Below, in pieces: positions 8,646 through 49,828 of a stretch of 53,894 bases of DNA. The DNA is taken from contig NC_068986.1 of NCBI RefSeq assembly GCF_001194135.2, forward strand, positions 36,869,368 through 36,923,261, in the 5' to 3' direction. Position numbers and translations under genes: made by a program. Source of the DNA: Octopus bimaculoides (lineage: Eukaryota). Each line of letters starts with the position of its first letter. Position 1 is the first letter of the stretch. The notes under the pieces were generated by a model. That model saw nothing but the letters and a program-made list of their open reading frames with translations. It had not been told where the DNA came from and searched no databases.

Positions 8646-9724
8646 TGCAGATGCCACAACCTTCGCATTTTTGATTTTGCGAGTCGAATGCACAATACAG
8701 GTCTTTAAACTGTTGACACTCGAGTGTGAAGCATTGGTCTTTTCTTGAAGTACGCCACATAAAAGTAATTAAGAAGGTTGAGATTTGGGCTATAACTGAG
8801 CCAGATGTTGACCCTCACAGAAAATGGCACCTTCCCACCAAGGAAGGCCTGTGTTGCTTTTGACACATGACATGGTGCAGAATCTTGGATAAGCACCACA
8901 TTGTCAAGTCCAAACTTCTGCTCCATCCAAAGTAACAGAGTTCTTCAGGATGTCCAGATACGTCTTTATACCGATCTTCAAGCCAGACTCTACGAAGTAT
9001 GGATCCATGAAACTTCTATCACCCGCCACAGCTCCAAATATCATCACAGGATTCTTAGTCTCAAACACAGGGCGGACGTTAGAAGGGTTATAAGCAATCA
9101 CTCGAGAATTTCTGAAATTCACCCCAGCATCCACAGTGAACTTCTTGTCCACAAACATGAGAGTTTTTCCTGCACCTTGATGTTTGATGGATGGCAGAAA
9201 CTTTGGGCATTTCTCGGTTCTGGATACTTTGGCCTTGGATTTTAGGTTGTGATGGCGTCGTCGTATAGAGCTAGTTACGCCAAAGTTCCTGTTTACAGCT
9301 CTGGACATTGTGGAAAGGGACACATTGCGTTTTTTGCAAGAGTTGTCATAGATGTGAATGTTGTCATAGATGTGGCTTCAATTGAGCGTTTGAGACCAAC
9401 GATGAAGTATAGATTGTGCTTGGAATCACTTCAAGTCTTGTGTTCTTTTCGATCAATCTTTCCCTCTACACGATAAACTGTTGCTTTTGGAAGTTTCGTT
9501 AACTGGACAATTTTATTGGCGGTGTGCCCGACGTGCGTCAAAACAACAATGACGAAACGATTCTGTTGCTCCATGACTTTCCATTGTCGAATCAGTTCGC
9601 TATTTACCTGAAAAATAGCGAAGAGGATTAGATTTTCAAGCAAGCAAGGTTTTGTCAAAAATAAAATGTTAAACTCACTAAGTCAACTGCTTAAAATTGG
9701 TCTCAATTTATCTGCAAGACTCTG
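8645..9724 (-). mobile_element. Tc1/mariner DD37D (maT-type) transposon relic, 3'-truncated
   Basis: N-terminal HTH (MEQQNRFVIV...KATVYRV), FVDKKFTVD, VMIFGAV, then QDSAPCH followed 37 residues later by NLLNY (third D mutated to N). 5' TIR CAGAGTCTTGCAGATAAATTGAGACC with TA at 9725-9726. Confidence 0.9.
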
Positions 9725-12932: not shown

Positions 12933-13235
12933 GTGCTAGGGTCGTTGGTACCGACCTCACACCCGCTTCAAAACTGTTGGCCGTATACCTAAATGAAGCA
13001 GCAATATTTTAATTGTCAGAGGACTGTAAATTGGGCGAATAGTTAGAGAAGTGAAAAATAGTTCGCAGTAGTTATTCTTGCTCTTAAGTTCTGAGTTCAA
13101 AACCCTCCGATGTCAACTTTAGCATTCCCATATGTTTGTTAAAATAGTGTACCAGGCAAGTGCTGGGGGAGGATGGTACTGACAAGCCTTCTCCTCTCGT
13201 AATTGCTGGCCTTGTCGCCAAAATTAGAGACAATG
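12933..13235 (+). mobile_element. SINE family B: tail stub plus a decayed full copy in tandem
   Basis: GTTCTGAGTTCAAA B-box region and tail AATTGCTGGCCTTGTCGCCAAAATTAGA. Confidence 0.6.
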
Positions 13236-18278: not shown

Positions 18279-18466
18279 GGATTTCAGAGGAGGGGGTAAG
18301 TCGATTACATCGACCCAGTGCTCAGCTGGTACTCATTTTATCGATTCCGAAAGGATGAAAGATAAATGTGACCTCGGCAGAATTTGAACTCAGAGCGTAA
18401 AGACAGACGAAATGCCGCTAAGCATTTCGCCCGTCGTGCTAACTATTCTGCCACCTCGCTGCCTTA
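18279..18466 (-). mobile_element. SINE family B
   Basis: CTGGTACTCATTTTATCGATTCCGAAAGGATGAAAG central domain and GAATTTGAACTCAGAGCGTAAAGACAGACGAAATGCCGCTAAGC head. Confidence 0.88.
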
Positions 18467-18511
18467 CGATGGCATAATATGAGCGATTATAAGATATAAG
18501 ACTGCCGATTG

Positions 18512-22756: not shown

Positions 22757-22839
22757 CGACAACTGTCTTTTGCTATTGCCTGGGGTCAAGCAAAGGCTTG
22801 TGAGTGAATTTGGTAGATAGAAACTGAAAGAAGCCCGTC

Positions 22840-22898
<59 letters not shown>

Positions 22899-23130
22899 TT
22901 TGTGTATGTGTTAGTTTCCCACCGCTTGACAACTGGTGTTGGTATGTTTACGTCCCCGTACCATGAGTGGTTGGGCAAAATAGACCAATAGAGTGTCAGG
23001 ATTTACAAAACAAAAATAATAAGCACTGGAGTCGATTCATTCGACAAAATTTCTTCAGTTCTTCAAGGTGATGCCCCAACATAGCCACGGTCTAGTGACT
23101 GAAAGAAGAAAAAGAAAAAAGGGAAAAAAG
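22757..23130 (+). mobile_element. SINE family A (head lost in gap), internal (TG)n
   Basis: GAAACTGAAAGAAGCCCGTCG, CGCTTGACAACTGGTGTTGG and tail GTGACTGAAA..AAAAGA. Confidence 0.85.
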
Positions 23131-30960: not shown

Positions 30961-31173
30961 TTTCTACTCTAGGCACAAGGCCCGAAATTTGGGGGAAGGA
31001 GACCAGTCAATTAGATCGAGCCCAGTTCACAACTGGTACTTAATTTATCGATCTCGAGAGGATGAAAGGCAAAGTCGACCTCGGCGGAATTTGAACTCAG
31101 AACGTAAAGTCAGACGAAATACCGCTAAGCATTTCACCCGGTGTGCTAAAGTTTCTGCCAGCAAGCCGCCTTA
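30961..31173 (-). mobile_element. SINE family B (tail variant AGGCACAAGGCCCGAAATTT)
   Basis: Well-preserved head and central domain, collinear with 39104-39336. Confidence 0.9.
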
Positions 31174-31300: not shown

Positions 31301-32065
31301 GTAGTGAGTAAAGGAAGATTTTGCACAATAGAGTTGAATGCCTCACTGTTTCTGGGGTTGTATGTTGATATAAATAGTAGTGTTTTGAGATGAGTTGTGG
31401 TGTTATGTTTTGTTGTTCTTAGTGCTGTTATGTCTAATTTTTTGGCACGTTTAATTCCCTCGTCTACAAGTGAGGGTAGATATTGTCTTTCAGTAAGTGT
31501 TGTTTTGAGGTCTTGAAGACGAAGCTCCTGAGTTGTTCTATCAGATACTATTGTGCAAATTCTTTTTGCCAAATTGAAAATATCCCTTGAAAATAAATAT
31601 CTCTTGAAAATAAATATCCCTTGAAAATAAATATCCCTTTTTACTAACTAGAGATCCAAAAATGAACGACATCCTGAAAACGCACAAACTCATCAAATGT
31701 AAAAATCAGCACAAATCGCTAAAGAGGCTACTAACAAATGCGAAGCTCTACAAAAAAACCACGAAACCAACAGTTAAAAAATGTGGACGCTCAAACTGTG
31801 GAACCTGCCCCAACTTACTTGAAAGCTCTGATTTCCTTTTCAAACATGGACAGAGGTTCACAATTAAAACTAGCTTCACTTGTGCCTCTGAGAACCTAAT
31901 TTATGTAATAACCTGCTCGGGTTGCGGACATAACTATATTGGACAAACGAGTATGACCTTGAGAAGGAGAACCACTCTACATAAAGAGCAAATCCGTTTC
32001 CCGCATTACAGGCAAATTCCTCTCAGTGAACATATAGAAAAATGTGCAGATAACATCAAACCAAA
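31301..32065 (+). mobile_element. Penelope-like element fragment with GIY-YIG endonuclease and inverted 5' segment
   Basis: Plus-strand ORF 31662-32075 has CGRSNCGTC, FTCASENLIYVITCSGCGHNYIGQT and LRRRTTLH..QI. The RT-EN linker (LAKRICTIVS...FISTYNPRN...QNLPLLT) lies on the minus strand at 31301-31586. Confidence 0.92.
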
Positions 32066-32287
32066 AAACACTTAACTTGGAACCAATATTGCAGCGATGA
32101 TGACGTAATATCTACTGTTGATGACTATTTTTGACCAACAAGATGAAAGCTTATTCACTAATGCGATCCAAGCACTGCAAGACCGATAGGAGAAGTATAT
32201 GGACAACAAGAGGGACTACGTTTAAAAATTTGGTCACATTCCTTAAAACTATCTTGGTCAACTTATGAACTTTTCAGTCGACCCTTG
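32063..32287 (+). mobile_element. mariner 3' end with TIR
   Basis: KKHLTWNQYCSDDDVISTVDD..DQQDESLFTNAIQALQDR*EK...DYV. Ends TATGAACTTTTCAGTCGACCCTTG followed by TA. Confidence 0.85.
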
Positions 32288-32594: not shown

Positions 32595-32891
32595 NNNNNN
32601 NNNNCTATCTATCTATCTATCTATCTCTCACCACAATCATCATTGCCACCTATTTCCATCTCTCCATCTCTAACCACGTCTCTGGCTATGTTTCCTTTCA
32701 CTTTACTAAAATATTTACTCCTCTTCTTTTCACGTTTTCTTTTCCATCTTCTCTACCTACATCTGTATCTCTCATCACACCTCTGTATTGCTTCCTTATC
32801 TCTAACTTATCAACCCTAATGTTTATATAAACACTACTTATGATACATTTGCCGTTAGTCTTCTGAACAAAATGTCGTGAACTTGCCACAG

Positions 32892-32947
32892 ATGCTACGC
32901 AGTCATCAAGATACATGCTAGTTGATGCTATCTTTGCTTATAAATTT
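32892..32947 (+). CDS. Candidate 56-nt internal exon (ATQSSRYMLVDAIFAYKF)
   Basis: CTTGCCACAG acceptor, one open frame and donor GTAAGT at 32948. No homology recognised. Confidence 0.2.
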
Positions 32948-33142
32948 GTAAGTTTTACACCTATCTACATAATTTTCATTATCATATCAATTATTCACTG
33001 ATCATTTGAAACAGCTGCACAGACAAGACCTACTTTGATCATATAAGCAATATTTTTTTCATATAAATATATTCCTTACACCTTGTCAGTTGTTCCTATA
33101 TATACATATACATACACGCACGCACACTCACACATATAAGTA

Positions 33143-33575
33143 TCTCTTTTACTCTTTTACTCTTTTACTCTTTTACTTGTTTCAGTCATTTGACTGTGGC
33201 CATGCTGGGGCACCGCCTTTAGTCGAGCAAATTGACCCCAGGACTTATTCTTTGTAAGCCAAGTACTTATTCTATCGGTTCTCTTTTGCCGAACCGCTAA
33301 GTTACGGGGATGTAAACGCACCACCATCGGTTGTCAAGCGATGTTCGGGGGACAAACACAGACACACAAACATATACACACACATACATATATACATATA
33401 TATATATATGTGACAGGCTTCTTTCAGTTTCCGTCTACCAAATCCACTCACAAGGCTTTGGTCGGCCCGAGGCTATAGCAGAAGACACTTGCCCAAGGTG
33501 CCATGCAGTGGGACTGACCTCGGAACCATGTGGTTGGTAAGCAAGCTACTTACCACACAGCCACTCCTGCGCCTA
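33143..33575 (-). mobile_element. SINE family A, full length (tRNA head, CORE-like CCTTGGGCAAGTGTCTTCT, internal microsatellite, (GTAAAAGA)n tail)
   Basis: Best-preserved copy: A box GTGGCTGTGTGGTAAG, CORE-like block and repeated tail unit. Confidence 0.92.
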
Positions 33576-34328
33576 TATATATTACATTTAGTACATATAC
33601 ATGCATATATACATATGTGTGCGTGCATGCATGCATATCTATTATTTGTGTGTATACAGAAATATTGTTTGTGTGTATACAGAGAGGAGGTAAAATTGCG
33701 AGTATGTGGTTTTAGCAAACCCATTTTGAGCCTCATTGTGAAAATATACACTGTGGTTAAAACAGGATTTTTTTTTCACTGTAACCAGAAAAATTAGATT
33801 GTTCTTGCTAGTTTCAAAATTTATTACTGCTTCCTGAGCGACCGTTTAGTCTTCTTTCTTTCTGACCACAAAGAGAACAATCATTTATAGCTAGTTATAT
33901 TAAACAAAAATCTCTTGCAGAACTAGATAAATTGATCTGTCTAGCATGCATAAAAGTGAAAACGTTGACAATGAAAACTTTATTTATCATTTAATTGTAA
34001 TAAGAAAAGTACAGCGTTGGAATATTTCATTTAAAGCGCTATTTCATATACTAATTATTCATACTCTTTTACATACGTCAGATAGAATATAACCTATTTT
34101 TGCTTTCAGTGGGGAGAAGAGGAGCCGATTACTCTCTGATGAAGCAATGATAATAACCGAAACTATTCGCATCAATCTCCTTTTCCTGGGCATAAAAACA
34201 AATCGCGTGGTTTAAACACGGAATCTATTTTTCACAAGGATGCTTAGTGTGTATATTTATTAAAGACATGCGCTCTACAATCAACGTACTGCCCCTATCT
34301 TAATATTGCTCCACCTTTTAGAGCTAAT

Positions 34329-34332
<4 letters not shown>

Positions 34333-34377
<45 letters not shown>

Positions 34378-34507
34378 CACACATACACGTACGCACACAC
34401 ACAAACATGCGCACAAACACACACGTATGTATGTATGTATGTATGTTTGTGTGTGCATGTGTATAAGTAAACATATATATCTTTTCTTTCAATTTTTCTT
34501 CCATTCC

Positions 34508-34548
<41 letters not shown>

Positions 34549-34621
34549 CATACACACATACATACACACATATATAAATATATATATATTTATATATATA
34601 CATATATATATACATATATAA

Positions 34622-34652
<31 letters not shown>

Positions 34653-35120
34653 CGTATGTATATGAGATAAAAGAGAAGGAAGAAAAGATGAAAGAAAAAA
34701 ACGTAGGAAGACGGACGGGAAATATAAAAGAAAAAATTAAAATCAATTGATTAGTATGGCCAAAATTCATTTTGAGATTCACGATATTATAAGTGAATTT
34801 CCTTGGGGAAATTTCATAAGTATTTGACAAGAAAAAGAGTGTCAGCTATTTTGGGGTGGTACGCAATCTAATATTTTTGCTCAATAATATGTGTATGTCT
34901 ATATGTACGTGGGTGAACAGTGACACGTGGAGGTACTTAAAGTTAGGGTGAGATAGAGTTAGTAAAACAAGACAGTGGACATATGTATGCATGTATGTAT
35001 GTACGTATCTATGTATGTATGTATGTATGTATGTGGGTACGAGATTAAAAATACATAGACACATATAAATGTAGAGAGAAAAAATGCTAGGCAATCAGGG
35101 ACGGTAGAAATGGATGGATT

Positions 35121-35162
<42 letters not shown>

Positions 35163-35462
35163 TATGTGTGTGTGTGTGTATGTGAGTGTATTATGGATAG
35201 CTGTTTATGTAGATGAACGGGTAGATAAACACATGCATACATACATTCATTCATATATACGTGTATGTGAGTGCCTGTGTTTCAGTATGTATGCACTCGT
35301 ACGTATCTCCACATATGTATGTGCGCGTGCGTGTCTCCACATATGTATGTGCGCGTGCGTATTTAGAGATTAGTTCCTATCTTGATCATTCTGTATTTCG
35401 TACAATAAACGTATATGTATATGTGTGTGTGAGTACGTATGCATATATGTATATTATGTGTA

Positions 35463-35519
<57 letters not shown>

Positions 35520-35588
35520 TATATAAATATATATATAATGTACGTACATATATATATGAATATATATGTATATATATATATATGTATT

Positions 35589-35623
<35 letters not shown>

Positions 35624-35625
35624 AG
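34333..35625. repeat. Compound microsatellite blocks ((CA)n, (TA)n, (TATG)n) with short unique spacers
   Basis: Directly visible. Confidence 0.9.
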
Positions 35626-36113
35626 AGAGAGGGGCAAGATTAATTCTTACACATATTTCTACAAGTTCTTTCGGTAAGTGGTTAAATTATTTTTGTCAGT
35701 CTCGACCTTCCATTAGTGTTTTAAAAGCTATCGATCATCTGTCATCAATTAAAAATGAACTCTTGAAGGAGGATAAAGATAAACGCGAAAATGGTTTGCA
35801 ATGTTCTCCTCCGTTGAAATGCAAATTTCTGCTTTTTGTAGTCAAGTGATATTTTTAATTGATGCAAATTAACATCTGTCCCCAAGTCAGCAATGAATGA
35901 TTAGACTCATGATCAAAAGCGTTTCAGTGATGGCCTTTTGTATATTTTATTCGGCGTATCTGTCACTATTTTTCCAACGTGTTCTACGTTCTTAAGACAC
36001 TATGGTGGGATTTGAGAATGATTCGACTGCTATAGATCCTTCCTTGTTTCCAAAACAACAATACAGGGATCCAGTTCGATAAGGCTCTCTGCTCGGTTTT
36101 TATCCTACATATA

Positions 36114-36600
36114 CAAGGTGTTATCAAAAAGTTTCCGGATTAGCTCTGTAGCGCGCCAACAGATGGCAGCACACGGTTGCGTGCGCAATTGGGAGTGACA
36201 TTCATGAAGCAGTGTGCCGAGTGACATCGCTGTATTTACTTCGCAAGCTGTGAAATTTGTATTTTTGTGCTCATGTGTATGTTGTAGTCTGCAATTTTGT
36301 CATGGACAGGAAGTTGAAACAAAAGGCCCACGTGAAATTTTGTATTAAACTTGGGAGTTCTGCTAGAGGGAGACATTGAGCATGCTTCGGAAAGCTTACA
36401 CCAACGAAGTAATGGGAAGCAATGGGTCGTACATAATCTTTCAAGTGGCACGAGTGCTTCAAAAGCGGGAGAACGTCCCTGGAAGACGGTGAGTTATCTG
36501 GAAGACCTGTCACGAGCGACAGCCCCGGAAATGAGGAGAAAATTCATCAGCTTGTGTAAGAGAATCGTCATGGGACAATAAACGACATTGCTATTGTTGT
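36114..36600 (+). mobile_element. mariner 5' fragment (TIR, 5' UTR, HTH domain)
   Basis: TA+CAAGGTGTTATCAAAAAGTTTCCGGA, then MDRKLKQKAHVKFCIKLG and FKWHECFKSGRTSLED..SGRP. Confidence 0.88.
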
Positions 36601-36848
36601 TGCAGTGGAACTGCGTCAGTGACCACATTGTGCTGTGCAAATGTTATCACCTCATGAAGTAGCTTAAACGGTAATTGAGCAGAGATATTTATTAGTAAAT
36701 GGTTATAATTGATTTGTCCACGGTATAATTGCTTCAGTGTTAACACACGAAGAAAAGATAAAGTGACTTGCTAGACAAGCACAACTTTGAAAGAGAAAAA
36801 TTCATATCTATACATACACAGATACGCACGCATATATGTGTTTGTGTG

Positions 36849-37020
36849 TATACGACGAGCTTCTTTCAGTTTCCATCTACCAAATTCACTGAGAAGGGTG
36901 TGGTCGGCCCGAGGCTATAGTATAAAACACTTACCCAAGATGACACGCAGTGGGATTGAACCCGGAATCATGTGGTTGGAAATCAAGTTTCTTACTACAC
37001 AGCCTTGCCTGCACCTATGC
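36849..37020 (-). mobile_element. SINE family A, head and CORE part
   Basis: CTTCTTTCAGTTTCCATCTACCAAAT and CAGTGGGATTGAACCCGGAATCATGTGG. Confidence 0.85.
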
Positions 37021-37023
37021 CAT

Positions 37024-37098
<75 letters not shown>

Positions 37099-37829
37099 TT
37101 AATGTATTTAATTTTTTAACACTCTTCAACTTATGCGAGTTTAAGATATGAGTGTGTGTGCGCGCGCGCGTGCGTGTGCATATGCCTGTGTATGTTTGTA
37201 TAGAGAGTATCTAAAGTATAAATGATTGGATATTTCTGAAGTATGCTAAGACCGTAATCGAACATTCTTATTTATTTTCTTTCAAATGTCATAAGTGTTC
37301 TCCTACTAACTTGATTTGTTTAGCAAGTTCCTCGATCATTCACCAAGCTCAATTAATACCTAAATCTTGTATTAATTCGTGATATTTTCTGACCCACATG
37401 ATAATTCCCCGTTGTCTATTATTATCACAAATGTGTTACAATAGCAAAATAAAACTACAATGTAATTCAAAGTCGCCATTATTGTCAACACTCTCCTTAA
37501 TTGCTGCAGCAATATTACAATGGTTTTATTGTCGTTCTGCGGCTTTTATATTTGACCAACCTATATTTAGTCATACGAGATTGCATATTTATGTCTTGTA
37601 CAAATATATACAAGTTTATTAGCCAACGAACCGAATCTCTCCCTCAAATCAATTCTTATTCAGTGCCTCCGTCGGTGAAGGTTAGCCACCTGCACATGTG
37701 TGTGCTGACTTGGACATGGTATTTTTAGAAAGATTAGCAGTTGCCCATACATGTAGGCCACTCGTCTCCACAGCACTGGTGTTTTTTTAAGAGGATGGCT
37801 ACCGAATTAGACCGATACAGCGTCATTCC

Positions 37830-38062
37830 AATGTTTCCACGGGCATTACTTTCAAAACACGAAGACCGGAAGCAGATATAGCGCAAGGTATCTTAACCGT
37901 CCTTCTAAGAGTTTTGCAATTTCACCGCTCTTGAATCTCTCATTTCTATTGATCTCGAATAGAAGAAAGGTGAAGTTGACATCAGTGGGACTTCAACTCA
38001 GCGAGTAGAATCTCAGAACAAATAGCTCGTGATTTCCTGTCCGGCACTGTAACGATTCTGCC
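37830..38062 (-). mobile_element. Two tandem decayed family B heads
   Basis: GAAAGGTGAAGTTGAC..GGACTTCAACTCAG and GTAACGATTCTGCC. Confidence 0.55.
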
Positions 38063-38070
38063 TATTCATA

Positions 38071-38309
38071 TAAGTAGATTTGGTTGACGGAAACTGAAAG
38101 TAGCCCGTCGTATATATGTGTGGAGGGTATATATGTGTGGAGGGTATATATGTGTGTGTGTGGTGGAGTATGTGTCTGCTTGTGTGCGTGTGTGTGTGTG
38201 TCTTTGTGTCTGTGTTTGTCCCCTACCGCCGCTTGACAACTGCCACTGGTGTGTTTACGTCCCTGTAACATTAGTAGCTCGGCAAAAGAGACCAGTAGAA
38301 TAAGTACCA
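38071..38309 (+). repeat. SINE family A body; local duplicate of 39439-39656
   Basis: Shares non-consensus bases with the 39439 copy that the other in-window copies lack. Confidence 0.85.
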
Positions 38310-38445
38310 TCCATCTCGTTCTTTGTCTACCCCTAGGTTTCCTGCCGGTTGCTTTGGCTTGAAGAAACTGCTTTCTGATTCTTTTAGTGAATCTCTGATC
38401 TAAGAAAATTGTTTTATACAATCCAGTCTGAATAACGTCGAGTTT
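38307..38445 (-). mobile_element. RTE-clade LINE ORF2 C-terminal fragment
   Basis: KQFLQAKATGRKPRGRQRTRW, the typical RTE G.R.RGR.R.RW motif. Confidence 0.65.
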
Positions 38446-38479
38446 TTTTTTTTTAATGAATGATGTTTCATTTACATGC

Positions 38480-38570
38480 AAGCATACATACATACGTACG
38501 TACATACATATATACATACATACACGCACACACACATATACATACATACATACAAACATACATACATACG

Positions 38571-38658
<88 letters not shown>
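38480..38658. repeat. (CATA)n plus long (CA)n microsatellite
   Basis: Directly visible. Confidence 0.97.
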
Positions 38659-38661
<3 letters not shown>

Positions 38662-39067
38662 TAAACTTCCTAAATAACGGAAACCTCAGGGATTTGAAAT
38701 GACGTTATTCTGAATTTTCCGTTGTCTTGGCAGTCTCTTTTAATGTATTTCTTGCCGCAAATAAATGTTGTATAGCAAATAAAAAAAGAGAGAAACTCAC
38801 TAATAAATACCATTTATTCGATAGCAGAAGGAATTTTGGCAAAACAGGAACATTTCAAAATATTTTTTATTAAAAAGCAATAGTTTTTTTTTTCCAAAAT
38901 TGTAGAATCGGACGTAAACAAATTAGTGAGTTTCCAACAGTTTATTTTTTATTCGTAACATAAAAAATGCTAGTGATGAATCATGTCTGAGTTAAATCGC
39001 CTTAAACATACATTTTCAAAATGTCCTCTACGTCTGCACTTCTGCTCTTAACACTACCACAAAAGTA

Positions 39068-39762
39068 TGCAGGCGTAAGCGTGGCTGTGTGGTAAGAAGC
39101 TTGGTAAGGCGGTGAGCTGGCAGAAACGTTAGCACGCCGGGCGTAATGCTCAGCGGTATTTCGTCTGCCGCTACGTTCTGAGTTCAAATTCCGCCGAGGT
39201 CGACTTTACCTTTCATCCTTTTGGGATCGATTAAATAAGTACCAATTACGCACTGGTGTCGATATAATCGACTTAATCCGTTTGTCTGTCCTTGTTTGTC
39301 CCCTCTGTGTGTAGCCTCTTGTGGGCAGTAAAGAAATAAGAAGCTTGCTTTCCAGCTACATGGTTCCGGGCTCAGTCCTACTACGTAGCACCTTGGACAA
39401 GTGTCTTCTACTATAGCCTCAGGCAAATCAATACTTTGTAAGTAGATTTAGTTGACGGAAACTGAAAGTAGCCCGTCGTATATATGTGTGGGGGGGCATA
39501 TGTGTGTATGGTGGGGTATGTGTCTGCTTGTGTGTGTGTGTGTGTGTCTTTGTGTCTGTGTTTGTCCCCTACCGCCGCTTGACAACCGCCGCTGGTGTGT
39601 TTACGTCCCTGTAACATTAGTAGCTCGGCAAAAGAGACCAGTAGAATAAGGTACCAGGTTTAAAAAATAAGTGCCGGGGCTGATTCATTGACTAAAATAT
39701 TCGCTTAGGTGGTGCTCCAGCATAGCCAAAGTTTAATGTCTAAAACAAGTAAAACATAAAAG
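39068..39762 (+). mobile_element. SINE family A, full length, interrupted by a family B insertion
   Basis: Head GTGGCTGTGTGGTAAGAAGCTTG resumes after the insert as CTTTCCAGCTACATGGTTCCGGG. Tail CCAGCATAGCC..AAACAAGTAAAA. Confidence 0.9.
39104..39336 (+). mobile_element. SINE family B, young full-length copy with 11-bp TSD
   Basis: TAAGAAGCTTG at 39093-39103 and 39337-39347. Intact head GGCGGTGAGCTGGCAGAAACGTTAGC..GAGTTCAAATTCC and central TTTCATCCTTTTGGGATCGATTAAATAAGTACC. Confidence 0.93.
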
Positions 39763-39959
39763 CTGGATGTATGTATATGTGTGCATGTGTATGTTAGTAC
39801 ATGTGTATATGAGTGTATGTCTATGTGTTTGTATGTGTGTCTATATATGCGCTATTTCACTTTTTGTATTTAATAGTATTCTTCCGAGAAAAGGAACTGG
39901 TTTTTAACAAAGAAACTAAAGATCTATCTCTAGAATTTGGATAACAACACCAATATTTT

Positions 39960-40128
39960 TTACATGTCGAACTTAAGAAACTCTTGCATATTTTTACTGT
40001 TCCACTTTCAGTTGAAGAGCGTAGGCTCGAAACGTCAAAGACTTTCTCTATTCCCGAGCGTTAAACTAATAATCCATTTGTTGTTTACACCACCTGTCTT
40101 CGTCTGCTGTTTTTTCGTAAATTCTCCC
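39960..40128 (+). mobile_element. Probable Penelope-like terminal repeat (pLTR) with a hammerhead-like motif, ending at a (TAGA)n run
   Basis: CTTTCAGTTGAAGAGCGTAGGCTCGAAACGTCAAAG has minimal type I hammerhead geometry, the kind known from PLE termini. Left boundary approximate. Confidence 0.6.
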
Positions 40129-40168
<40 letters not shown>

Positions 40169-40305
40169 GCTCCAATGAAACTATAAGGTGTTACTCAGCC
40201 ACTCAATTGAGTCCATTGCATTTTATAGCAGAAACAGCTGTAAGCTAATGAAGTTCCTATGATAATCGTTTATTCCTTTGTCATCTCATTTTCTTATACA
40301 CACAA

Positions 40306-40349
<44 letters not shown>

Positions 40350-40916
40350 TCACTCACTCACACACACATGCACACACATATGCACACACACACACACACA
40401 TGATGCTTTAACAAGACAGAAAGGAAGAGGTAATCATCAGGTGGTGATCAGTCGAGTCACGGATATTATTCCAATTCGCTTTCCACTATTATCTATTCCA
40501 CCCATTTTATACTTCTATGCACGTAACAGATTCTTTATTCTGCTCTCTTCTAAAATACAAACCTTCCTTGTCACTGAAAACAAATCAGTATTAATAAGAT
40601 ATTTCTTTATCTATTTATTCACTCATTTTTTTTTTCACCATGCTTTCCTACCGAGAGCTTCAAAAAAGTAACAAAGAGGAATCATATTTCAAGATCTCAC
40701 CATATGGGTCTATTGTGTTATTCCTCAGCTTGAGACAATTTTTAATTCATTCGCCATTCAACAAGAAATTTTCTCTTAGCAGGGAAGTCATGAATAATAA
40801 TATAACAATCGACCACTTTTGAAAAGATTGTACAAGGTTTCAATATTTAATAAAAGCAATAAACTTAACCAATGGGACTGAATCTTTTTTTTTTACATTT
40901 TGTTTATTCTTCTTTC

Positions 40917-40947
<31 letters not shown>

Positions 40948-41166
40948 CATTCTTTTCAAATATTCAAACGGTTTTATACAGCAGAACAGAACAGGGCAGC
41001 TTTCATTTCAGCAAATTTTTTGTATTACATGTTGCAGGATGTGACATTCCATAGCATATCTGTTTCAATGCAGAAAGCATAAAATTTGAAGCCACCGGTT
41101 GATGTTTAATGCAAATATATGTATGAGTGTGTATATGTGTATATATACACATATATATAATGTATG

Positions 41167-41256
<90 letters not shown>

Positions 41257-41530
41257 GTGCGTGTGTGTATGTATATATATACCTATGTAAATATATGTGT
41301 GTGGGGATGCGTAGAAGTGAAAATTTATATATATACAGAACAAATAGTGAAGGATTATCAATCCCAGCAAAATAGTCCATATGCTCTATGTTAGAACACC
41401 AGACTAAAAATATTACTTACATTAGTGAAGGAGTCCATGTAATCTATTGGCAGGGTCCCCAGTTATGGTTAATCATAACTCAACATTATTATTAAGGTGG
41501 CGATTCTATCAGCTCAGCTCGCCACCTTAA

Positions 41531-41705
41531 TAATAATGGTTTCAAATTTTGGCACAAGGCCCCAGTGCTTGATTGGTACTTACTTTATCGACCCCAAAAC
41601 GATGAAAGGTAAAGTCACCCCAGTGGACTTTGAACTCACGACTTCAAGACGGGCGAAATACCGCTAATCATTTTTCCTGGTCTGCTAACGATTCCGACAG
41701 CTTAA
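41531..41705 (-). mobile_element. SINE family B (tail variant GTTTCAAATTTTGGCACAAGG)
   Basis: TGGTACTTACTTTATCGACCCCAAAACGATGAAAGG and TTTGAACTCACG..GAAATACCGCTAA. Confidence 0.85.
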
Positions 41706-41844
41706 ATCATAAATGTTACATTGTAAAGCAGAACATATGTTTTGCTAAGTAAATTTCTTCCTTATTTCTGAGTACTTTGATTATGATCAAAGTGTAGCAC
41801 TTTTAGTGAACATCAACAGTTGAAGTAACAAATGATTGATGAAT

Positions 41845-42464
41845 AACCATTTGTTTATTTCTCTACATTCACCACAAAATTACAGTTAACATAATTACGT
41901 GAAGTCAGCTGATGAGTAGACAGCATTGTTTTACGTCAACAGTCAGCACAATTAAATCGCAGCAGTTTAGCTAAATGTAGATAGGTACCATATAGAGGCT
42001 CAAATGCATGCAGCTGATGCACCGTATAACACTGTGTAACACGATTTTTGTTCTTGAGTAGCAACTGTTATTTCTTATTTACTTACCTCTAGAAAGTATG
42101 AAAAACGTCTAATATTTCCTTTTATATTTATTCAAACCCCAAAGAATCCCACTCAAGACATTGCTATGATGCTCCCCTATTATACCTGTTCATGATCAGA
42201 GATGCACATTTTGTCAGCTACTCAGGGTAAATAAGAAATAACAGTTGCTACTCAAGAACAAAAATCGTGTTACACAGTGTTATACGGTGCATCAGCTGCA
42301 TGCATTTGAGCCTCTATATGGTACCTATCTACATTTAGCTAAACTGCTGCGATTTAATTGTGTTGACTGTTGACGTAAAACAATGCTGTCTACTCATCAG
42401 CTGACTTCACGTAATTATGTTAACTGTAATTTTGTGGTGAATGTAGAGAAATAAACAAATGGTT
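41845..42464. repeat. Long inverted repeat: 238-bp arms (41845-42082 and 42227-42464), 144-bp spacer, one mismatch
   Basis: Base-by-base comparison shows identical arms except G41946 opposite T42363. Confidence 0.97.
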
Positions 42465-42993
42465 TCAAATTTTGGCACAAGTGGTTATGGTCACGCAATG
42501 GTATTGAACAGAATATTTGCTACAACGATATTTCTGCTTCAGCAGCTCAGCGCTAAATCTGTTTGAAATGTAATGGCAAACATTTCAGTTTCAAAACATT
42601 GATGTCCAGGTCAAAAAGCAAATTTTGAAGGGAATAGTAGTCATTTTCTTTGATTTCTAGATAGAAGCAAATAGGAAGTAATACTTACTGACCAGAGACA
42701 AGAAAATAATTAAAATTTTGTTACACAGTGTAATCCACTAGTGTTTTGTAAGTTTTCCGAGATGAATTCAATCCCTATTTTGGGTATGTATTGTAGAAGA
42801 ACATGCTCCGCCAAAATAACTATCGTTAGATACAATACATCACAGCATAGTATTTATAAGTTCTCTGCCAAATTTATGCGTTAGTAGATCCTGGAATTCA
42901 TTACTTCCTACATTCACTCGATATTTAGCCTTGAGAGTCCTAATTTTCTAAGTAGTCTTGGACACTGAATTTGGGCTTTGGAAAGGGACATTT

Positions 42994-43205
42994 GTGAAGA
43001 TGCATGGCTTAGTGGTTAGGATGTTGCACTCACGAACGCAAGATCGTTGTTTCAATTTCCGGCAAAACATTTCATTTCTCATTGCTGGAGTCCACTCAGC
43101 TGTAAACGAATGACCCTGCGACCATTTTGAGGAAATGTTGCAATCTCGGTTACTTAATCGCCATGGAAACCGGATACTCGGGCCTATAAGTCTTAAGACA
43201 CGCAA
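42994..43205 (+). mobile_element. SINE family C head with partial CORE and V-like remnants
   Basis: GTGAAGATGCATGGCTTAGTGGTTAGG, GCTGGAGTCCACTCAGCTG, ACCCTGCGA and GCCATGGAAACCGG. Confidence 0.7.
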
Positions 43206-43770
43206 GTAGTGTATGGATGACATAATTAGGTATAGCCCTTTCCACGACGGAAGCGGTGCTAAATAATATATAAATGACAGAATGTTTGTTATTTTTAAGA
43301 ATTGGTATCGAATCTTTCCCTAAAGCATATCAAATTATACAATATGGACATCATCAGTAATATTACACAAGAGACACCAAAAGTAGTAATTGGATAGCAG
43401 GGACCTTCAATCAATTAATAAATCAATCAGACGACATTTTGTCTATTTGAATTCTGTTCGATCTTTATTTCAGACGACACCAGTTGCAAACAGACAGACA
43501 TTTTATGATAGTAAATAATATTCTTTAATGCAAGCAGATAAAAACAATAAGTGACGCAGACGAAGTATTGACAAAATATCGACAAAATATTGACAGAATA
43601 TTGACAAGCAGTGTTGTGGACTGATTATTGTAATAACTGGAACCAACTTCAATGATTCAATCGTTTATTTCGATTACATTCAATGATTGTTTCTCTTGTA
43701 TATACAACTCATCAGATTTGCAATTCCGAAAGCTGGCTAATAGCACCAGGAAGTTTGTTTTCAACTCATG

Positions 43771-43812
43771 GTGTTGTTGCTGTTGTTGTTGTTGTCGTCG
43801 TCGTCGTCGTCG

Positions 43813-43880
<68 letters not shown>

Positions 43881-43890
43881 GCTGTTGTTG
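43771..43890. repeat. (GTT)n with an internal (GTC)n patch
   Basis: Directly visible. Confidence 0.97.
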
Positions 43891-44309
43891 GCGATGATGA
43901 TAATTTTGTTGTCGTAGTGTCTAGTTAGAATCACGTTGAATTATTTCAAAAATGGAGTTTTTCATCCCTTGAGAGTTTTGTGTGTGGAATTTGTGTACAA
44001 TGCAGTAAGTTTTCTCCCCAACGCTACCACCACAAGATGTAAATGATGTGCCTTGAGCTTATATATGTACACCTAATACTTTTCAATCGCATCTAAATAT
44101 CCTATTCTCCGGCATTCACTGTTGAAATATTCCAGTTTTATTATCCACCTGAGTTACGCTAAATAATTTCATTACCAGGTAAACTGCATGTCTTTCTTGT
44201 ATATCATTCAATGATGGCAGTGAGCCATAGATTGTCCAAACGCCTTACAAAACTTTCGCATAATATCGAGCAATATTCGTGCTGTTCTTTTAGCTGTTGC
44301 TGTTACTTT

Positions 44310-44480
44310 CGTTTTGTTGTTCTGAGTTAGCCCTGATCAAGTAGGCCTATAACCATAGACATTCCAGCCGAGACCATCCCTTCTTTTAGGGAATATTCAA
44401 GACTATATGATCCAAAATACTCTTTCCTTTAAAAAATAAACGGCGGGCGTGGGCTTTGAGCGAGATACGGCAGTTGTTTC
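44310..44480 (-). mobile_element. Family D copy
   Basis: GTTAGCCCTGATCAAGTAGGCCTAT..ACATTCCAGCCGAGACCATCCC, the best-preserved copy. Confidence 0.7.
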
Positions 44481-44599
44481 TAGCAAAAAGAGTGAACAGA
44501 AACACAGTAGTTTTCATTTGGGAATTTCTAATTTCAATATTTTCATGTTGCCAGTGCGACAGCAGAATCGTTAGAACTTTGAAAGACCTGCTTACTAAC

Positions 44600-44762
44600 A
44601 TTTATTCAAACCTTCAATGTTATGAGGTCAAATCCCGCATAGATCATACCTTTCTTTCATCCAAGGTCGATAAAATACACTAGTCACATACTGGGTTCGA
44701 TATAATCAACTACTCCTCTCCCCTCAAAACATTTAGTTTTGTACCTATGTTGTAAACAATAT
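44600..44762 (+). mobile_element. SINE family B, decayed
   Basis: CTTTCATCCAAGGTCGATAAAATA and CTGGGTTCGATATAATCAACT. Confidence 0.7.
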
Positions 44763-45134
44763 TTTTGCGTTTTATATTATAAGATTTCCCAACGTAATTT
44801 GAATAGAAATAATTTGCTTGGTTCCTTTAATTTAATTTTCAAGAAACAGCATTATACTAGCTGCTGAAATACATTTTAATCAACTCTTTCCTTTGTTAGA
44901 TTAGATTATGTTTACTCGTTGATGAGGATATTGTAAGAATTTCGAAACACGGAGACCTTTGGTATCGTTTACAGCTAGAATGTATGCGAAATACAATTAC
45001 GTAGTTTTATAGAAGAGGGTAGCCCCTATTTATGTATGCATGTGTGTGTGTACGTACACACATATGAATATACATACATATATATATATGTGTGTGTGTG
45101 TACGTACACACATGAATATACATACATATATATA

Positions 45135-45199
<65 letters not shown>

Positions 45200-46920: not shown

Positions 46921-47087
46921 ACTAGTGTGAAACACTAGTTTTTGAAATATTAAAATTAAAAATATTATTATTTCTAATTTTTAGTATTTTTAATTTTAAT
47001 ATTTCAAAAACGTGAAAACTTATAAGAAGGACAGTATATATTATTATTTCTAATTTTTAGTATTTTTAATTTTAATATTTCAAAAAC
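46921..47087. repeat. Combined hairpin, 27-bp inverted repeat and 50-bp direct repeat
   Basis: ACTAGTGT-GAA-ACACTAGT; IR 46938-46964 / 46985-47011; DR 46962-47011 / 47038-47087. Confidence 0.92.
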
Positions 47088-47472
47088 TTTAATAATATAT
47101 AGGTATATAAAGGGTTCTTAATGCATCTCTGAAGAACGGAATTACTAACAATAAGATTATCTTTAGATCACTTTGCGATTGTAGTAATATCCGTGAAACG
47201 ATCGTAAGATATTTTATTTTATTCTTTTAACTTTAGGCTTCTTTATATTTTATATTTATATTTTATATTTTAGAATTTATAATATTCATGCTTATTTACA
47301 CCTANNNNNNNNNNNNNNNNNNNNNNNNNNNNNNNNNNNNNNNNNNNNNNNNNNNNNNNNNNNNNNNNNNNNNNNNNNNNNNNNNNNNNNNNNNNNNNNN
47401 NNNNNNNNNNNNNNNNNNNNNNNNNNNNNNNNNNNNNNNNNNNNNNNNNNNNNNNNNNNNNNNNNNNNNNNN

Positions 47473-47505
<33 letters not shown>

Positions 47506-49624
47506 TGTATGTATATGCAGTAAATATATGAGGATATATGCAGTAAATATGGCATCGATAATTTAGAATTCTTCTACCAAGGTAAAGAAGAAAAAGATGC
47601 TATACTTTCTTACAACAATCAGCAACGTCAATGCTTTTGATGCTAATCGCCTGAATCAAGTTAGTAATAGAAAGAACCTGAAGATTATTTTTCTAGTGTG
47701 AAGTTCATTAATTTATAAAGGTAAAAAAAACCTTACTAGTTATTTATCTGGGTTTTTCTTTTTTTTTTTTTGCAGTATTTGATTGACTAATTATGCGGTT
47801 GCTACATAACTATATAGTTACTTCACATTTTGATCATTCTCACAATTATTCGTAATCAAAAAAAAGTTCGAAGACATAATAAGGTATCTTCTAGCTAGTG
47901 CAATAAATGAGATTGATGCATTTGGTTCTGCAAGATATCTCTAAGTAGGCCAATAAATACCTCACTCCTCAGGTGCAACAGGTTCATAGAAAGAAAAGTT
48001 GATTAAAGAAACGATGGAACGAAATCTGAGAAAAGTAAATTTGTGCAAAAGAAATTTGCTTAATTTAGTAATAATTATTGCAGACTTCTCTTCATTAGCT
48101 GTTTATAACTATCAGCCACTAGTTAATTAGCACCTGGTTTCCATATACCGACTTTAAAATTGTAAATCCTCACACAAATCGTCGCAAAATTAATAATAGC
48201 ATCAGATATCATTCACGCAGCTTTGACTACAGCGTTACTATTCACTTATTTTGTTTCCAAAACACAAGATTTAAAAAACAAAAGGGCAGGGTATCAGTGA
48301 GCTACAGTATATCTAAATAGTTCGCTATTCTTGCGGCAGCCATTAATAAATAAAACTTAACTTTACATAAATTTACTTTACTGGTTGGAGAGACGTTTCA
48401 TTAACAATGCTGGTTATAAACTTATAAATAGTTGTGCATCAATGATATCATGTAGTTAAACAATGACAAGATGTGGTAAAATGGCAGTTAGCTCATCGGA
48501 TAGAATGACTCGTAGTATTTGCTTTGGTAGTTAGTACTCTGAGGTCAACTTTTAATTTTTTCGGACTTGAAAAATATAGAAATGCAACTTAACAATCATT
48601 TGTAGTATATACAATGATCGTTTGACCTGCACATGTGATGTGTTTTGCCCATGATAACTATAAAATGTTATGACACTAAATTCACTGATTGAATTTAGTG
48701 TTATAACATTGAAGTCGGCTTATGAAATTTAACCTTTTGACGATGCCATGTAGCACAGCAGACTTTTGACATTTCAGTTCAACACTTTATTTGCTCGGTT
48801 AGATTCGACTTTCTTCGTAACTATTTCTTACAAGACCATGTATTTGGTTTCTTTTATTCTTTCCTTGGTTTCAGCCAGAGGCAGTGACCATGTTGGAACA
48901 TCGCCATTGTAGAGAATCTGATCAACATTTGTAGTAGGCTGGTGAGGTTTTTTTATCGATTGAGAGACGTTGCTATCAGAAAACAAAGAGCTGAAACAGA
49001 TACGGAAGGCATCTCCGTCTGACAGTTCCGTCAAGCCTCTGCCTTCCATTGGTACTTTTTTTATGGACCCTGAAATGAGAAAAAATAAAGCTGACCTCGG
49101 CAGGGTCTGAATTCAGAATGCAGTAACTGTCAGAACATACACCACGAGGTATTCTATCCAAATCTACCAATTCACTTTCTTTTAGAATGCTACCAAAGTC
49201 ATCCAAAGGCAAAATGGTTGTGATTGTGATAAATGAAAGATGTGAAACAGATTCGAAACCTTTGTGAATTACATGTAACGCATGCAGTGCTGATTTGTTC
49301 CTGTTTCTATTTAACTATTTATAACAATTATTTGAACTCGTGTACGTCAATGAAGTACCACGAGAGCAGTTGTATAAGGTTCTACCGTTTGTCCAAGTGT
49401 TATTTTGATGTTGCTGTGTTTAACCTCAAGTCTGTTCTTATTAAGTTGACCTATGAACAAGGACCTTCCCGTACATTGTCCAATGAAGCCATACTTTTCT
49501 TGAAGACTTTGGGGGTGTAATTTGAAGTAACTTTGATTTCTGTTTCTTACAGATCAGCAAAGAGAAAGATCTTCCTTTGGCGGTTCGTTGCATTAATGCT
49601 AAAAAATAGTTATTTACTTTTAAA

Positions 49625-49828
49625 TATTTGTTTCAAATTTTGGTACAGGTCCTGCAATTTGGGGGAAAGGGTAATTCGATTACACCGACTCCAGTGTTCA
49701 ACTGGTACTTATTTTTTCGACCCCGAAAGGATATGAAAGTCAATCTCAGCAGAATTTGAACCTAAAAACGGACGAAATGCCGCTAAGGATTTTGTTCAAC
49801 GTGCTTAATAATTCTGTCAGCTCAGCTC
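49625..49828 (-). mobile_element. SINE family B
   Basis: GTTTCAAATTTTGGTACAGG tail, CTGGTACTTATTTTTTCGACCCCGAAAGGAT and GGACGAAATGCCGCTAAG. Confidence 0.85.

What the first reader, a model, noticed from the sequence alone, without database searches (positions are those of the whole stretch)
41845..42464. 238-bp inverted repeat with one mismatch: a near-perfect long hairpin of apparently unique DNA
Seen: the arms differ at one position only (G41946/T42363). That is a G-U wobble in a plus-strand transcript and an A-C mismatch in a minus-strand transcript. There is no TSD and the ends do not look like TIRs, so it does not resemble a MITE. The outer end runs through AATGGT into a 24-bp string (42458-42481) identical to 41535-41558. 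Established: long perfect dsRNA is a substrate for ADAR and Dicer, coleoids edit RNA heavily, ADAR favours A-C mismatches, and such repeats can extrude cruciforms. Inference: a recent fold-back duplication by template switching, or arms kept homogeneous by conversion; if transcribed it would be a strong editing or endo-siRNA locus.
Basis: partly seen in the sequence, partly recalled or inferred. Interest (0 to 1): 0.7.

Follow-up and report, generated by a model that had tools for sequence, protein, structure and literature searches.

The report
Young inverted duplication in octopus-like DNA
A 238-base stretch of non-coding, repeat-rich octopus-type DNA was recently copied backwards 144 bases away, most likely by a replication slip, giving a near-perfect hairpin of a kind that is common in octopus genomes and has no shown function here.

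Summary
Arms 41845-42082 and 42227-42464 are complementary at 237 of 238 positions (G41946/T42363), with a 144-nt loop and sharp ends. This cannot be chance.

The element is non-coding and matches no Rfam family. It lies in a 12.6-kb gap-free stretch of SINE- and microsatellite-rich DNA that shares repeat families with Octopus sinensis.

Three features point to a young local inverted duplication by replication template switching rather than a transposon:
- No target-site duplication of 2-12 bp exists.
- The right arm overlaps by 7 nt (AATGGTT) an isolated 24-nt SINE 3'-end string identical to a SINE copy 923 bp upstream. This fits microhomology or a templated insertion.
- An old, 67%-identical inverted fragment (42620-42734) runs without a gap across the left-arm/loop junction. 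That junction is therefore ancient, and the left arm is probably the source.

One difference in 238 nt suggests an age near 0.6 My (roughly 0.02-3 My).

Two smaller perfect hairpin loci lie elsewhere in the window, and a perfect 215-bp inverted duplication lies in 20 kb of O. sinensis. Published work finds such repeats unusually frequent in octopus.

Transcription, editing, small RNAs and genome-wide copy number could not be tested. It is an ordinary member of a known class.

The parts
41845..42082 (+). Left arm of the inverted repeat (238 nt). It is the probable source copy.
   Evidence: Its inner junction with the loop (42082|42083) is crossed without a gap by the old third copy, so this junction predates the young duplication.
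42083..42226 (.). 144-nt loop (spacer), unique in the window. It begins with TTAC, repeating the last 4 nt of the left arm.
   Evidence: The first 47 nt match the reverse complement of 42620-42666 at 32/47. That is the only one of 51,746 window positions reaching this identity.
42227..42464 (-). Right arm, the reverse complement of the left arm. It is the probable new copy.
   Evidence: The sequence just inside it (42180-42226) matches the third copy at only 7/47. Its outer 7 nt overlap the SINE-derived 24-mer.
41946..41946 (.). The single mismatch: G here opposite T42363. This is G-U in a plus-strand RNA and C/A in a minus-strand RNA.
42458..42481 (-). Isolated 24-nt fragment of a SINE 3' end (GGTTTCAAATTTTGGCACAAG plus AAT of the tail). 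Its first 7 nt (AATGGTT) are also the last 7 nt of the right arm. This is read as a microhomology or templated-insertion junction.
   Evidence: It is identical to 41535-41558. DNA to the right (42482-42640) has no SINE homology: score 18 against a shuffle mean of 16.8.
41535..41705 (-). SINE copy A, a tRNA-derived SINE family with at least 6 copies in the window. Its 3' end is the possible template of the 24-nt string 923 bp downstream.
42620..42734 (-). Old, roughly 67%-identical inverted copy of 42026-42129 (the inner 57 nt of the left arm plus the first 47 nt of the loop).
   Evidence: Gapped score 47 against a shuffle maximum of 35. Ungapped 85-nt match, E = 1.4e-8. Identity on each side of the junction is 25/38 and 32/47.
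41827..41855 (.). Small quasi-hairpin at the outer edge of the left arm: AACAAATGATT / gatgaat / AACCATTTGTT (10 of 11 paired). Its role is unexplained.
   Evidence: My rough estimate of the chance probability is about 0.01-0.02.

Best explanation
The structure is a young, local inverted duplication in non-coding, repeat-rich octopod DNA. It was made in one replication or repair event by template switching, the same process as template-switch mutation or MMBIR-type fold-back but with a long 238-nt copied tract.

Most likely course (inferred):
- A strand being synthesised in the plus sense left its template after 42226.
- It copied the plus strand of the already replicated segment 42082 down to 41845 backwards.
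- Its new 3' end AATGGTT then re-annealed. Either it annealed directly to an AATGGTT that followed the departure point, or it first annealed to the AATGGTT of SINE copy A 923 bp upstream and copied 17 more bases before returning.

The result is a 620-bp hairpin-capable element with sharp ends and no target-site duplication. The two arms have since acquired one substitution (or one assembly error), which puts the event at roughly 0.6 My, range about 0.02-3 My. This uses the octopus repeat calibration of 0.09 JC distance per 25 My from PMC13282606.

Shown here: the repeat itself, its sharp ends, the lack of a TSD, the 7-nt overlap, and the older fragment crossing the left junction. Inferred: the mechanism, its direction and its age.

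There is no evidence of any function. If the locus lies in a transcribed region, the RNA would form a 238-bp duplex and would be an expected ADAR hyper-editing or Dicer substrate.
For: - The repeat is real and far younger than anything else nearby. It is 99.6% identical, against 70-88% for all other repeat pairs in the window.
- Both ends are sharp, with no decayed homology beyond them.
- No TSD of 2-12 bp exists at any boundary offset within 12 nt. The only hit is an 11-nt near-repeat that is itself part of the arm.
- The arm's outer 7 nt are the first 7 nt of a 24-nt string identical to the 3' end of a SINE 923 bp away. That string is an isolated fragment with no further SINE homology. Duplication models explain this overlap. 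A transposon end would need a 4-7-nt coincidence.
- The old inverted fragment 42620-42734 aligns without a gap across 42082|42083 (E = 1.4e-8; 32/47 in the loop part, unique among 51,746 positions). It does not align with the sequence inside the right arm (7/47). The arm's inner end is therefore not an element terminus, and the left arm sits in ancient context.
- The element has no coding capacity (longest open frame 45 codons), no Rfam family and no protein-database match.
- The same signature recurs. Perfect 20-bp and 27-28-bp hairpins of non-simple sequence occur at 41484-41538 and 46937-47088, where shuffles give none. A perfect 215-bp inverted copy of an internal transposase fragment occurs in O. 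sinensis.
- Template switching is documented to create perfect hairpins in a single event, also where no repeat pre-existed (PMC10710096).
Against: - No outgroup or pre-duplication allele was available, so the ancestral state is inferred, not seen.
- The inner junction shows no microhomology (0-1 nt). Instead TTAC is present twice, and both units are already in the old fragment.
- A 238-nt copied tract is much longer than the 30-55-nt stems catalogued for template-switch hairpins in primates (PMC10710096).
- Direction is not certain. If the spacer was later flipped by exchange between the arms, the old fragment would equally fit the right arm as source. The A/T-rich arm end next to the SINE fragment also looks like a natural SINE tail.
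- Genome-wide copy number is unknown, so a low-copy foldback transposon is not excluded.
Confidence: 0.58

Rival explanations
1. It is a single non-autonomous foldback or MITE-like DNA transposon of 620 bp, with 238-bp terminal inverted repeats. It inserted recently, and the old fragment at 42620-42734 is a decayed relative.
For: The size and hairpin shape fit. Palindromic MITEs are a known source of tight dsRNA, for example the Xenopus Harbinger repeat (PMC5625713). MITEs and many TIR families are annotated as recently active in O. vulgaris (PMC13282606). A second, old, partly homologous fragment lies 155 bp away. Absence of other copies in about 100 kb has little power.
Against: No TSD of any length from 2 to 12 bp exists, and no recognisable superfamily terminal motif. 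The right end overlaps a SINE-derived 24-mer by 7 nt, which a transposon end would match only by coincidence. The old fragment covers only 115 bp. It does not extend along the arm or the rest of the loop as a family member should.
Confidence: 0.17
2. It is an old inverted repeat whose arms are kept nearly identical by recurrent gene conversion or by template switching between the arms.
For: Homogenisation of inverted-repeat arms by template switching is documented (PMC8604942, PMC13100816, abstracts). The old third copy shows that inverted copies of this segment have existed here for a long time.
Against: The old copy has drifted to 67% identity, so conversion does not protect this sequence in general. 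The arms are short, and both ends are sharp with no graded identity. There is no sign of selection or function that would maintain an unstable hairpin.
Confidence: 0.08
3. It is an assembly artefact: one real copy was traversed twice in opposite directions, or a chimeric fold-back molecule was assembled.
For: The window comes from a scaffolded assembly with eight N-gaps of varied length. A repeat longer than short reads is hard to resolve.
Against: The repeat lies inside a 12.6-kb gap-free stretch (32605-45199). It has a unique 144-nt asymmetric loop and different unique flanks on each side. The arms differ at one base, which a twice-traversed graph node would not normally give. Library fold-back chimeras are palindromic to the read end and lack a spacer (my own knowledge). 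A comparable perfect repeat exists in a chromosome-level O. sinensis assembly.
Confidence: 0.07
4. It is a functional hairpin-RNA gene, selected to produce endo-siRNAs or to act as an ADAR-regulated dsRNA.
For: It forms a 238-bp almost perfect duplex on either strand. The octopus shows the strongest hyper-editing signal among 21 species, tied to long near-perfect dsRNA (PMC5625713).
Against: No transcription evidence could be consulted. The arms have no detectable homology to any protein-coding sequence. There is no Rfam match. The extreme youth and neutral-looking context (SINEs, microsatellites, dead transposons) need no selection.
Confidence: 0.05

Closest known systems
Template-switch mutations (Ripley quasi-palindrome model; Loytynoja & Goldman 2017, PMC5453318; Monttinen et al. 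2023, PMC10710096)
   Same: A reverse-complement copy of nearby sequence is made in cis in one event. It gives a perfect stem with sharp ends and no TSD, and needs no pre-existing repeat.
   Different: The copied tract here is 238 nt, against tens of nucleotides in the primate catalogue (stems of 30-55 nt were selected there). The ancestral state is not observed here.
Microhomology-mediated break-induced replication / FoSTeS fold-back inversions and ODIRA (PMC10766183, PMC4689423)
   Same: Template switching occurs between strands at a fork. Junctions have short microhomology (here 7 nt at one junction), and there may be an extra short templated insertion from nearby DNA.
   Different: Those events usually span kilobases to megabases and create copy-number change of genes. 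This one is 238 bp and interstitial, with no triplication.
Palindromic MITEs, e.g. the ~200-bp Harbinger repeat of Xenopus tropicalis (PMC5625713)
   Same: Both are short non-coding elements that fold on themselves into a tight duplex and would be hyper-edited if transcribed.
   Different: MITEs are dispersed multi-copy families with target-site duplications. Here no TSD is present and no second full copy is known.
Hairpin-RNA (hpRNA) endo-siRNA loci of Drosophila and inverted-repeat siRNA loci of mouse oocytes (my own knowledge)
   Same: Both are long inverted duplications with a spacer that give a long perfect RNA hairpin.
   Different: Those arms derive from target genes and their small RNAs are documented. 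Here the arms match no gene and no expression data exist.
Inverted SINE/Alu pairs as ADAR substrates (PMC5625713)
   Same: Two inverted, closely spaced similar sequences form intramolecular dsRNA.
   Different: Those arise from two independent insertions of a repeat family. Here the arm's inner end is not an element boundary, so the arms are not independent insertions.

Membership tests
Template-switch inverted duplication | Reverse-complement copy of a sequence lying close by on the same molecule | tested here: met
   Arms are 144 nt apart and 237/238 complementary.
Template-switch inverted duplication | Sharp copy boundaries with no target-site duplication | tested here: met
   Complementarity ends abruptly. 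No TSD of 2-12 bp.
Template-switch inverted duplication | Microhomology or templated insertion at switch points | tested here: inconclusive
   There is a 7-nt overlap (AATGGTT) with a 24-nt string identical to DNA 923 bp upstream at the outer junction. There is 0-1 nt of microhomology at the inner junction.
Template-switch inverted duplication | Ancestral or outgroup sequence lacks the copy | not testable with these tools
   No cephalopod genome could be searched by DNA. Exact-match scans of metagenome and prokaryote collections were empty.
MITE / foldback DNA transposon | Terminal inverted repeats and small size, non-coding | tested here: met
   620 bp in total with 238-nt inverted ends. No open frame exceeds 45 codons.
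MITE / foldback DNA transposon | Target-site duplication flanking the element | tested here: not met
   None found at any boundary offset of +/-12 nt, for lengths 2-12.
MITE / foldback DNA transposon | Multiple dispersed copies with the same termini | not testable with these tools
   No further full copy exists in the 54-kb window or in 49 kb of fetched octopus-like loci. This sample is far too small to exclude a family.
Two independent inverted insertions of one repeat family | Each arm is a complete element with its own ends | tested here: not met
   Old homology runs without a gap through the arm's inner end into the loop.
hpRNA / endo-siRNA locus | Long RNA hairpin potential | tested here: met
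   -442 and -449 kcal/mol, z = -47 and -58.
hpRNA / endo-siRNA locus | Transcription and 21-23-nt small RNAs from the arms | not testable with these tools
   No expression data were accessible.
hpRNA / endo-siRNA locus | Arms homologous to a target gene | tested here: inconclusive
   A six-frame pseudo-protein of the arms and loop found nothing among 5.8 billion proteins. UTR or non-coding targets cannot be tested.
ADAR hyper-editing substrate | Clusters of A-to-G mismatches in RNA reads | not testable with these tools
   Only the structural precondition (long near-perfect duplex) is met (PMC5625713).
microRNA precursor | Match to a curated family, or a hairpin of about 60-90 nt | tested here: not met
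   No Rfam hit in the element. The stem is 238 bp.

The most novel reading that the evidence does not exclude
This 1.3-kb neighbourhood holds four inverted-copy structures of different ages: a 20-bp perfect hairpin at 41484-41538, a quasi-hairpin at 41827-41855, the 238-bp repeat, and the old 115-bp inverted copy at 42620-42734. It may be a recurrent template-switching hotspot. More broadly, octopus genomes may generate long perfect inverted duplications at an unusually high rate. That would supply the long dsRNA behind their exceptional hyper-editing signal and could seed new hairpin-RNA genes. This locus would then be a newborn example that is transcribed and edited or diced.
Probability: 0.1. 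Interest if true: 0.6.

Novelty: new member of a known kind. Interest (0 to 1): 0.25.

Why it matters
On its own the locus matters little. It is a neutral-looking structural mutation in junk-like DNA.

It is a clean, datable example of how a long perfect hairpin can arise in one step. Its junctions (a 7-nt overlap with a SINE-derived string, and an older copy that polarises the event) make the mechanism readable from sequence alone.

A genome-wide count might show that such non-transposon inverted duplications make up much of the near-perfect inverted repeats reported in octopus (0.44% of random loci, PMC5625713). That would help explain where the substrates of cephalopod hyper-editing come from.

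Tried and rejected
- **Independent assemblies via arm ORFs.** Exact look-up of the 42-aa arm ORFs in public assemblies found nothing on record.
- **Protein search of the element.** A six-frame pseudo-protein of arms, loop and junctions against 5.8 billion proteins gave no hit.
- **Protein search of neighbours.** The same with ORFs within 10 kb plus the GIY-YIG ORF gave no hit. The orthologous locus in other assemblies could therefore not be reached.
- **Exact DNA scans.** A 31-mer of the arm found nothing in metagenome contigs or in prokaryote genome contigs, as expected for animal DNA.
- **Literature search for the SINE.** Sequence strings of the SINE found nothing. The SINE's identity as an octopus SINE rests on my memory plus shared repeats with O. 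sinensis. The window's SINE consensus was not found in the 20 kb of O. sinensis fetched.
- **Rfam.** There is no family above threshold in the window. Only a sub-threshold mir-126-like hit on the small hairpin at 41476-41546 appeared, and it is outside the element.
- **SINE homology of the right flank.** The MAFFT alignment seemed to suggest an internally deleted SINE. A scored test against shuffles rejected this.
- **11-nt near-repeat as a TSD.** AACAAATG(A/G)TT was rejected as a TSD because its right copy is the arm's own terminus.
- **Microhomology at the inner junction.** None was found. The TTAC-TTAC doublet is already present in the old copy.

Full report
**Observation**

- Arms 41845-42082 and 42227-42464 are 238 nt each and complementary at 237 positions. 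The only mismatch is G41946 opposite T42363. BLAST gives E = 5e-121.
- The loop is 144 nt.
- Complementarity stops abruptly at both ends.
- As RNA, the plus strand folds at -442 kcal/mol and the minus strand at -449. Shuffles give about -130 and -143, so z = -47 and -58.
- The mismatch is a paired G-U in the plus strand and an unpaired A/C in the minus strand.
- The 24-nt string 42458-42481 is identical to 41535-41558.

**Context**

- The window is eukaryotic, 34% G+C, and has eight N-gaps. The repeat lies inside a 12.6-kb gap-free stretch, 32605-45199.
- It is full of TG/TA microsatellites. It holds at least six copies of one tRNA-derived SINE family, a Penelope-like GIY-YIG ORF and a dead mariner-like transposase.
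- That transposase remnant is 64% identical to an Octopus sinensis protein.
- Window repeats match repeats in a 20-kb O. sinensis locus at 73-85% nucleotide identity. An octopod origin is therefore well supported, although the species is unknown.
- No tRNA and no Rfam family reaches threshold.
- The element has no open frame above 45 codons and no relative among 5.8 billion proteins.
- At 99.6% identity it is far younger than every other repeat pair in the window, which are 70-88% identical.

**What the ends say**

- No target-site duplication of 2-12 bp exists at any boundary offset within 12 nt.
- The 24-nt string is the 3' end of the SINE (minus orientation) plus AAT of its tail. It equals SINE copy A, 923 bp upstream.
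- The DNA to its right has no SINE homology at all, so the string is an isolated fragment.
- Its first 7 nt, AATGGTT, are also the last 7 nt of the right arm.
- A transposon terminus would share these bases only by coincidence. A copying event explains them in one of two ways: the copy ran 7 nt into the string, or those 7 nt were the microhomology used for the return switch.
- The perfect 24/24 identity to copy A contrasts with 17-30% divergence among SINE copies here. It also fits a short templated insertion from copy A during a multi-switch event.

**The older copy**

- 42620-42734 is a roughly 67%-identical inverted copy of 42026-42129. The gapped score is 47 against a shuffle maximum of 35. 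The ungapped 85-nt match has E = 1.4e-8.
- It crosses the left-arm/loop junction without a gap, at 25/38 in the arm and 32/47 in the loop.
- Among 51,746 positions in the window, only this one reaches 32/47 against the loop start.
- The sequence inside the right arm matches it at 7/47, which is random.

Two conclusions follow.
- The arm's inner end is not an element terminus. That rules out two independent insertions of a 238-bp repeat.
- The left arm/loop junction is ancient. The simplest history therefore makes the left arm the source and the right arm the new copy.
- A later flip of the spacer would allow the opposite direction, so direction is favoured, not proven.

**Mechanism (inferred)**

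- A nascent plus-sense strand left its template after 42226.
- It copied 42082 back to 41845 from the other strand, or from itself.
- It returned through AATGGTT, with or without a 17-nt detour on SINE copy A.
- The inner junction has no microhomology. The TTAC-TTAC doublet there is already present in the old copy.

Template switching is documented to make perfect hairpins in one event without a pre-existing repeat (PMC10710096) and to homogenise or enlarge inverted repeats. The tract here is much longer than the catalogued primate cases.

With one difference in 238 nt and the octopus repeat calibration of 0.09 JC per 25 My (PMC13282606), the age is about 0.6 My. The Poisson range is roughly 0.02-3 My.

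**How unusual it is**

- Two further perfect inverted-repeat loci of non-simple sequence lie in the window. They are 41484-41538 (20-bp stem) and 46937-47088 (27-28-bp stems). Shuffles give none.
- The only O. sinensis stretch fetched holds a perfect 215-bp inverted copy of an internal transposase fragment, with a 1436-nt spacer.
- Porath et al. report that 0.44% of random 50-bp loci in O. bimaculoides have a >95% identical reverse-oriented partner within 2 kb. This is among the highest of 19 species, and octopus has the strongest hyper-editing signal (PMC5625713).
- The finding therefore belongs to a common, already noted class.

**Rivals**

- A low-copy foldback or MITE-like transposon remains possible, because genome-wide copy number could not be measured. 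It is disfavoured by the missing TSD, the overlap with the SINE string and the truncated shape of the old copy.
- Conversion-maintained old arms and an assembly artefact are each unlikely but untested.
- A selected hairpin-RNA function has no support beyond the fold.

**Verdict**

The structural interpretation is largely supported, and the functional interpretation is untested. This is an ordinary new member of a known kind, and its interest is low to moderate.

Noticed in passing
window 41484-41538: A perfect 20-bp hairpin with a 15-nt loop: CATTATTATTAAGGTGGCGA / TCGCCACCTTAATAATAATG. It is built from a SINE head plus a SINE tail and lies immediately left of SINE copy A. It looks like a short template-switch product. 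It gives a sub-threshold mir-126 Rfam hit (29 bits against a gathering score of 47).
   Followed up: partly
window 46937-47088: A 27-28-nt A/T-rich segment pairs perfectly with two downstream reverse copies. Those copies sit in a ~47-nt direct repeat (TTATTATTTCTAATTTTTAGTATTTTTAATTTTAATATTTCAAAAAC, present twice). This is a hairpin plus a tandem duplication.
   Followed up: partly
L001 8493-8707 and 10144-10358 (Octopus sinensis CM016867.1): A perfect 215-bp inverted repeat with a 1436-nt spacer. Its arm is an internal transposase-coding fragment. The right arm sits in natural transposon context. The left arm abuts a (TA)n run and a SINE-like insertion. It is a second young inverted duplication of a non-terminal fragment.
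   Followed up: partly
window 41827-41855: A quasi-hairpin, AACAAATGATT-gatgaat-AACCATTTGTT (10/11 paired), lies exactly at the outer edge of the left arm. A similar decamer, ACAAGTGGTT, lies at 42477-42486. Its meaning for the switch points is unclear.
   Followed up: partly
window 8708-9377 (minus strand): A frameshifted mariner-like (DDE_3) transposase remnant. It is 61% identical to an intact 288-aa transposase on two marine (Tara) metagenome contigs and 64% identical to an O. sinensis protein.
   Followed up: partly
window 31614-32072 (plus strand): An ORF with a GIY-YIG nuclease domain, scoring at the Pfam threshold, as in Penelope-like retroelements.
   Followed up: no
window 18289-18467, 30961-31173, 39104-39275, 41532-41702, 49623-49824, 13055-13234: At least six copies of one tRNA-derived SINE family at 69-91% identity to their consensus. 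This consensus was not found in the 20 kb of O. sinensis or in the other fetched loci.
   Followed up: partly
window 22758-23121, 33162-33552, 36849-36994, 38071-38309, 39337-39762: A second dispersed repeat family, whose translated motif is RRASFSF.LPNSL, has five or more copies at 70-88% identity.
   Followed up: no
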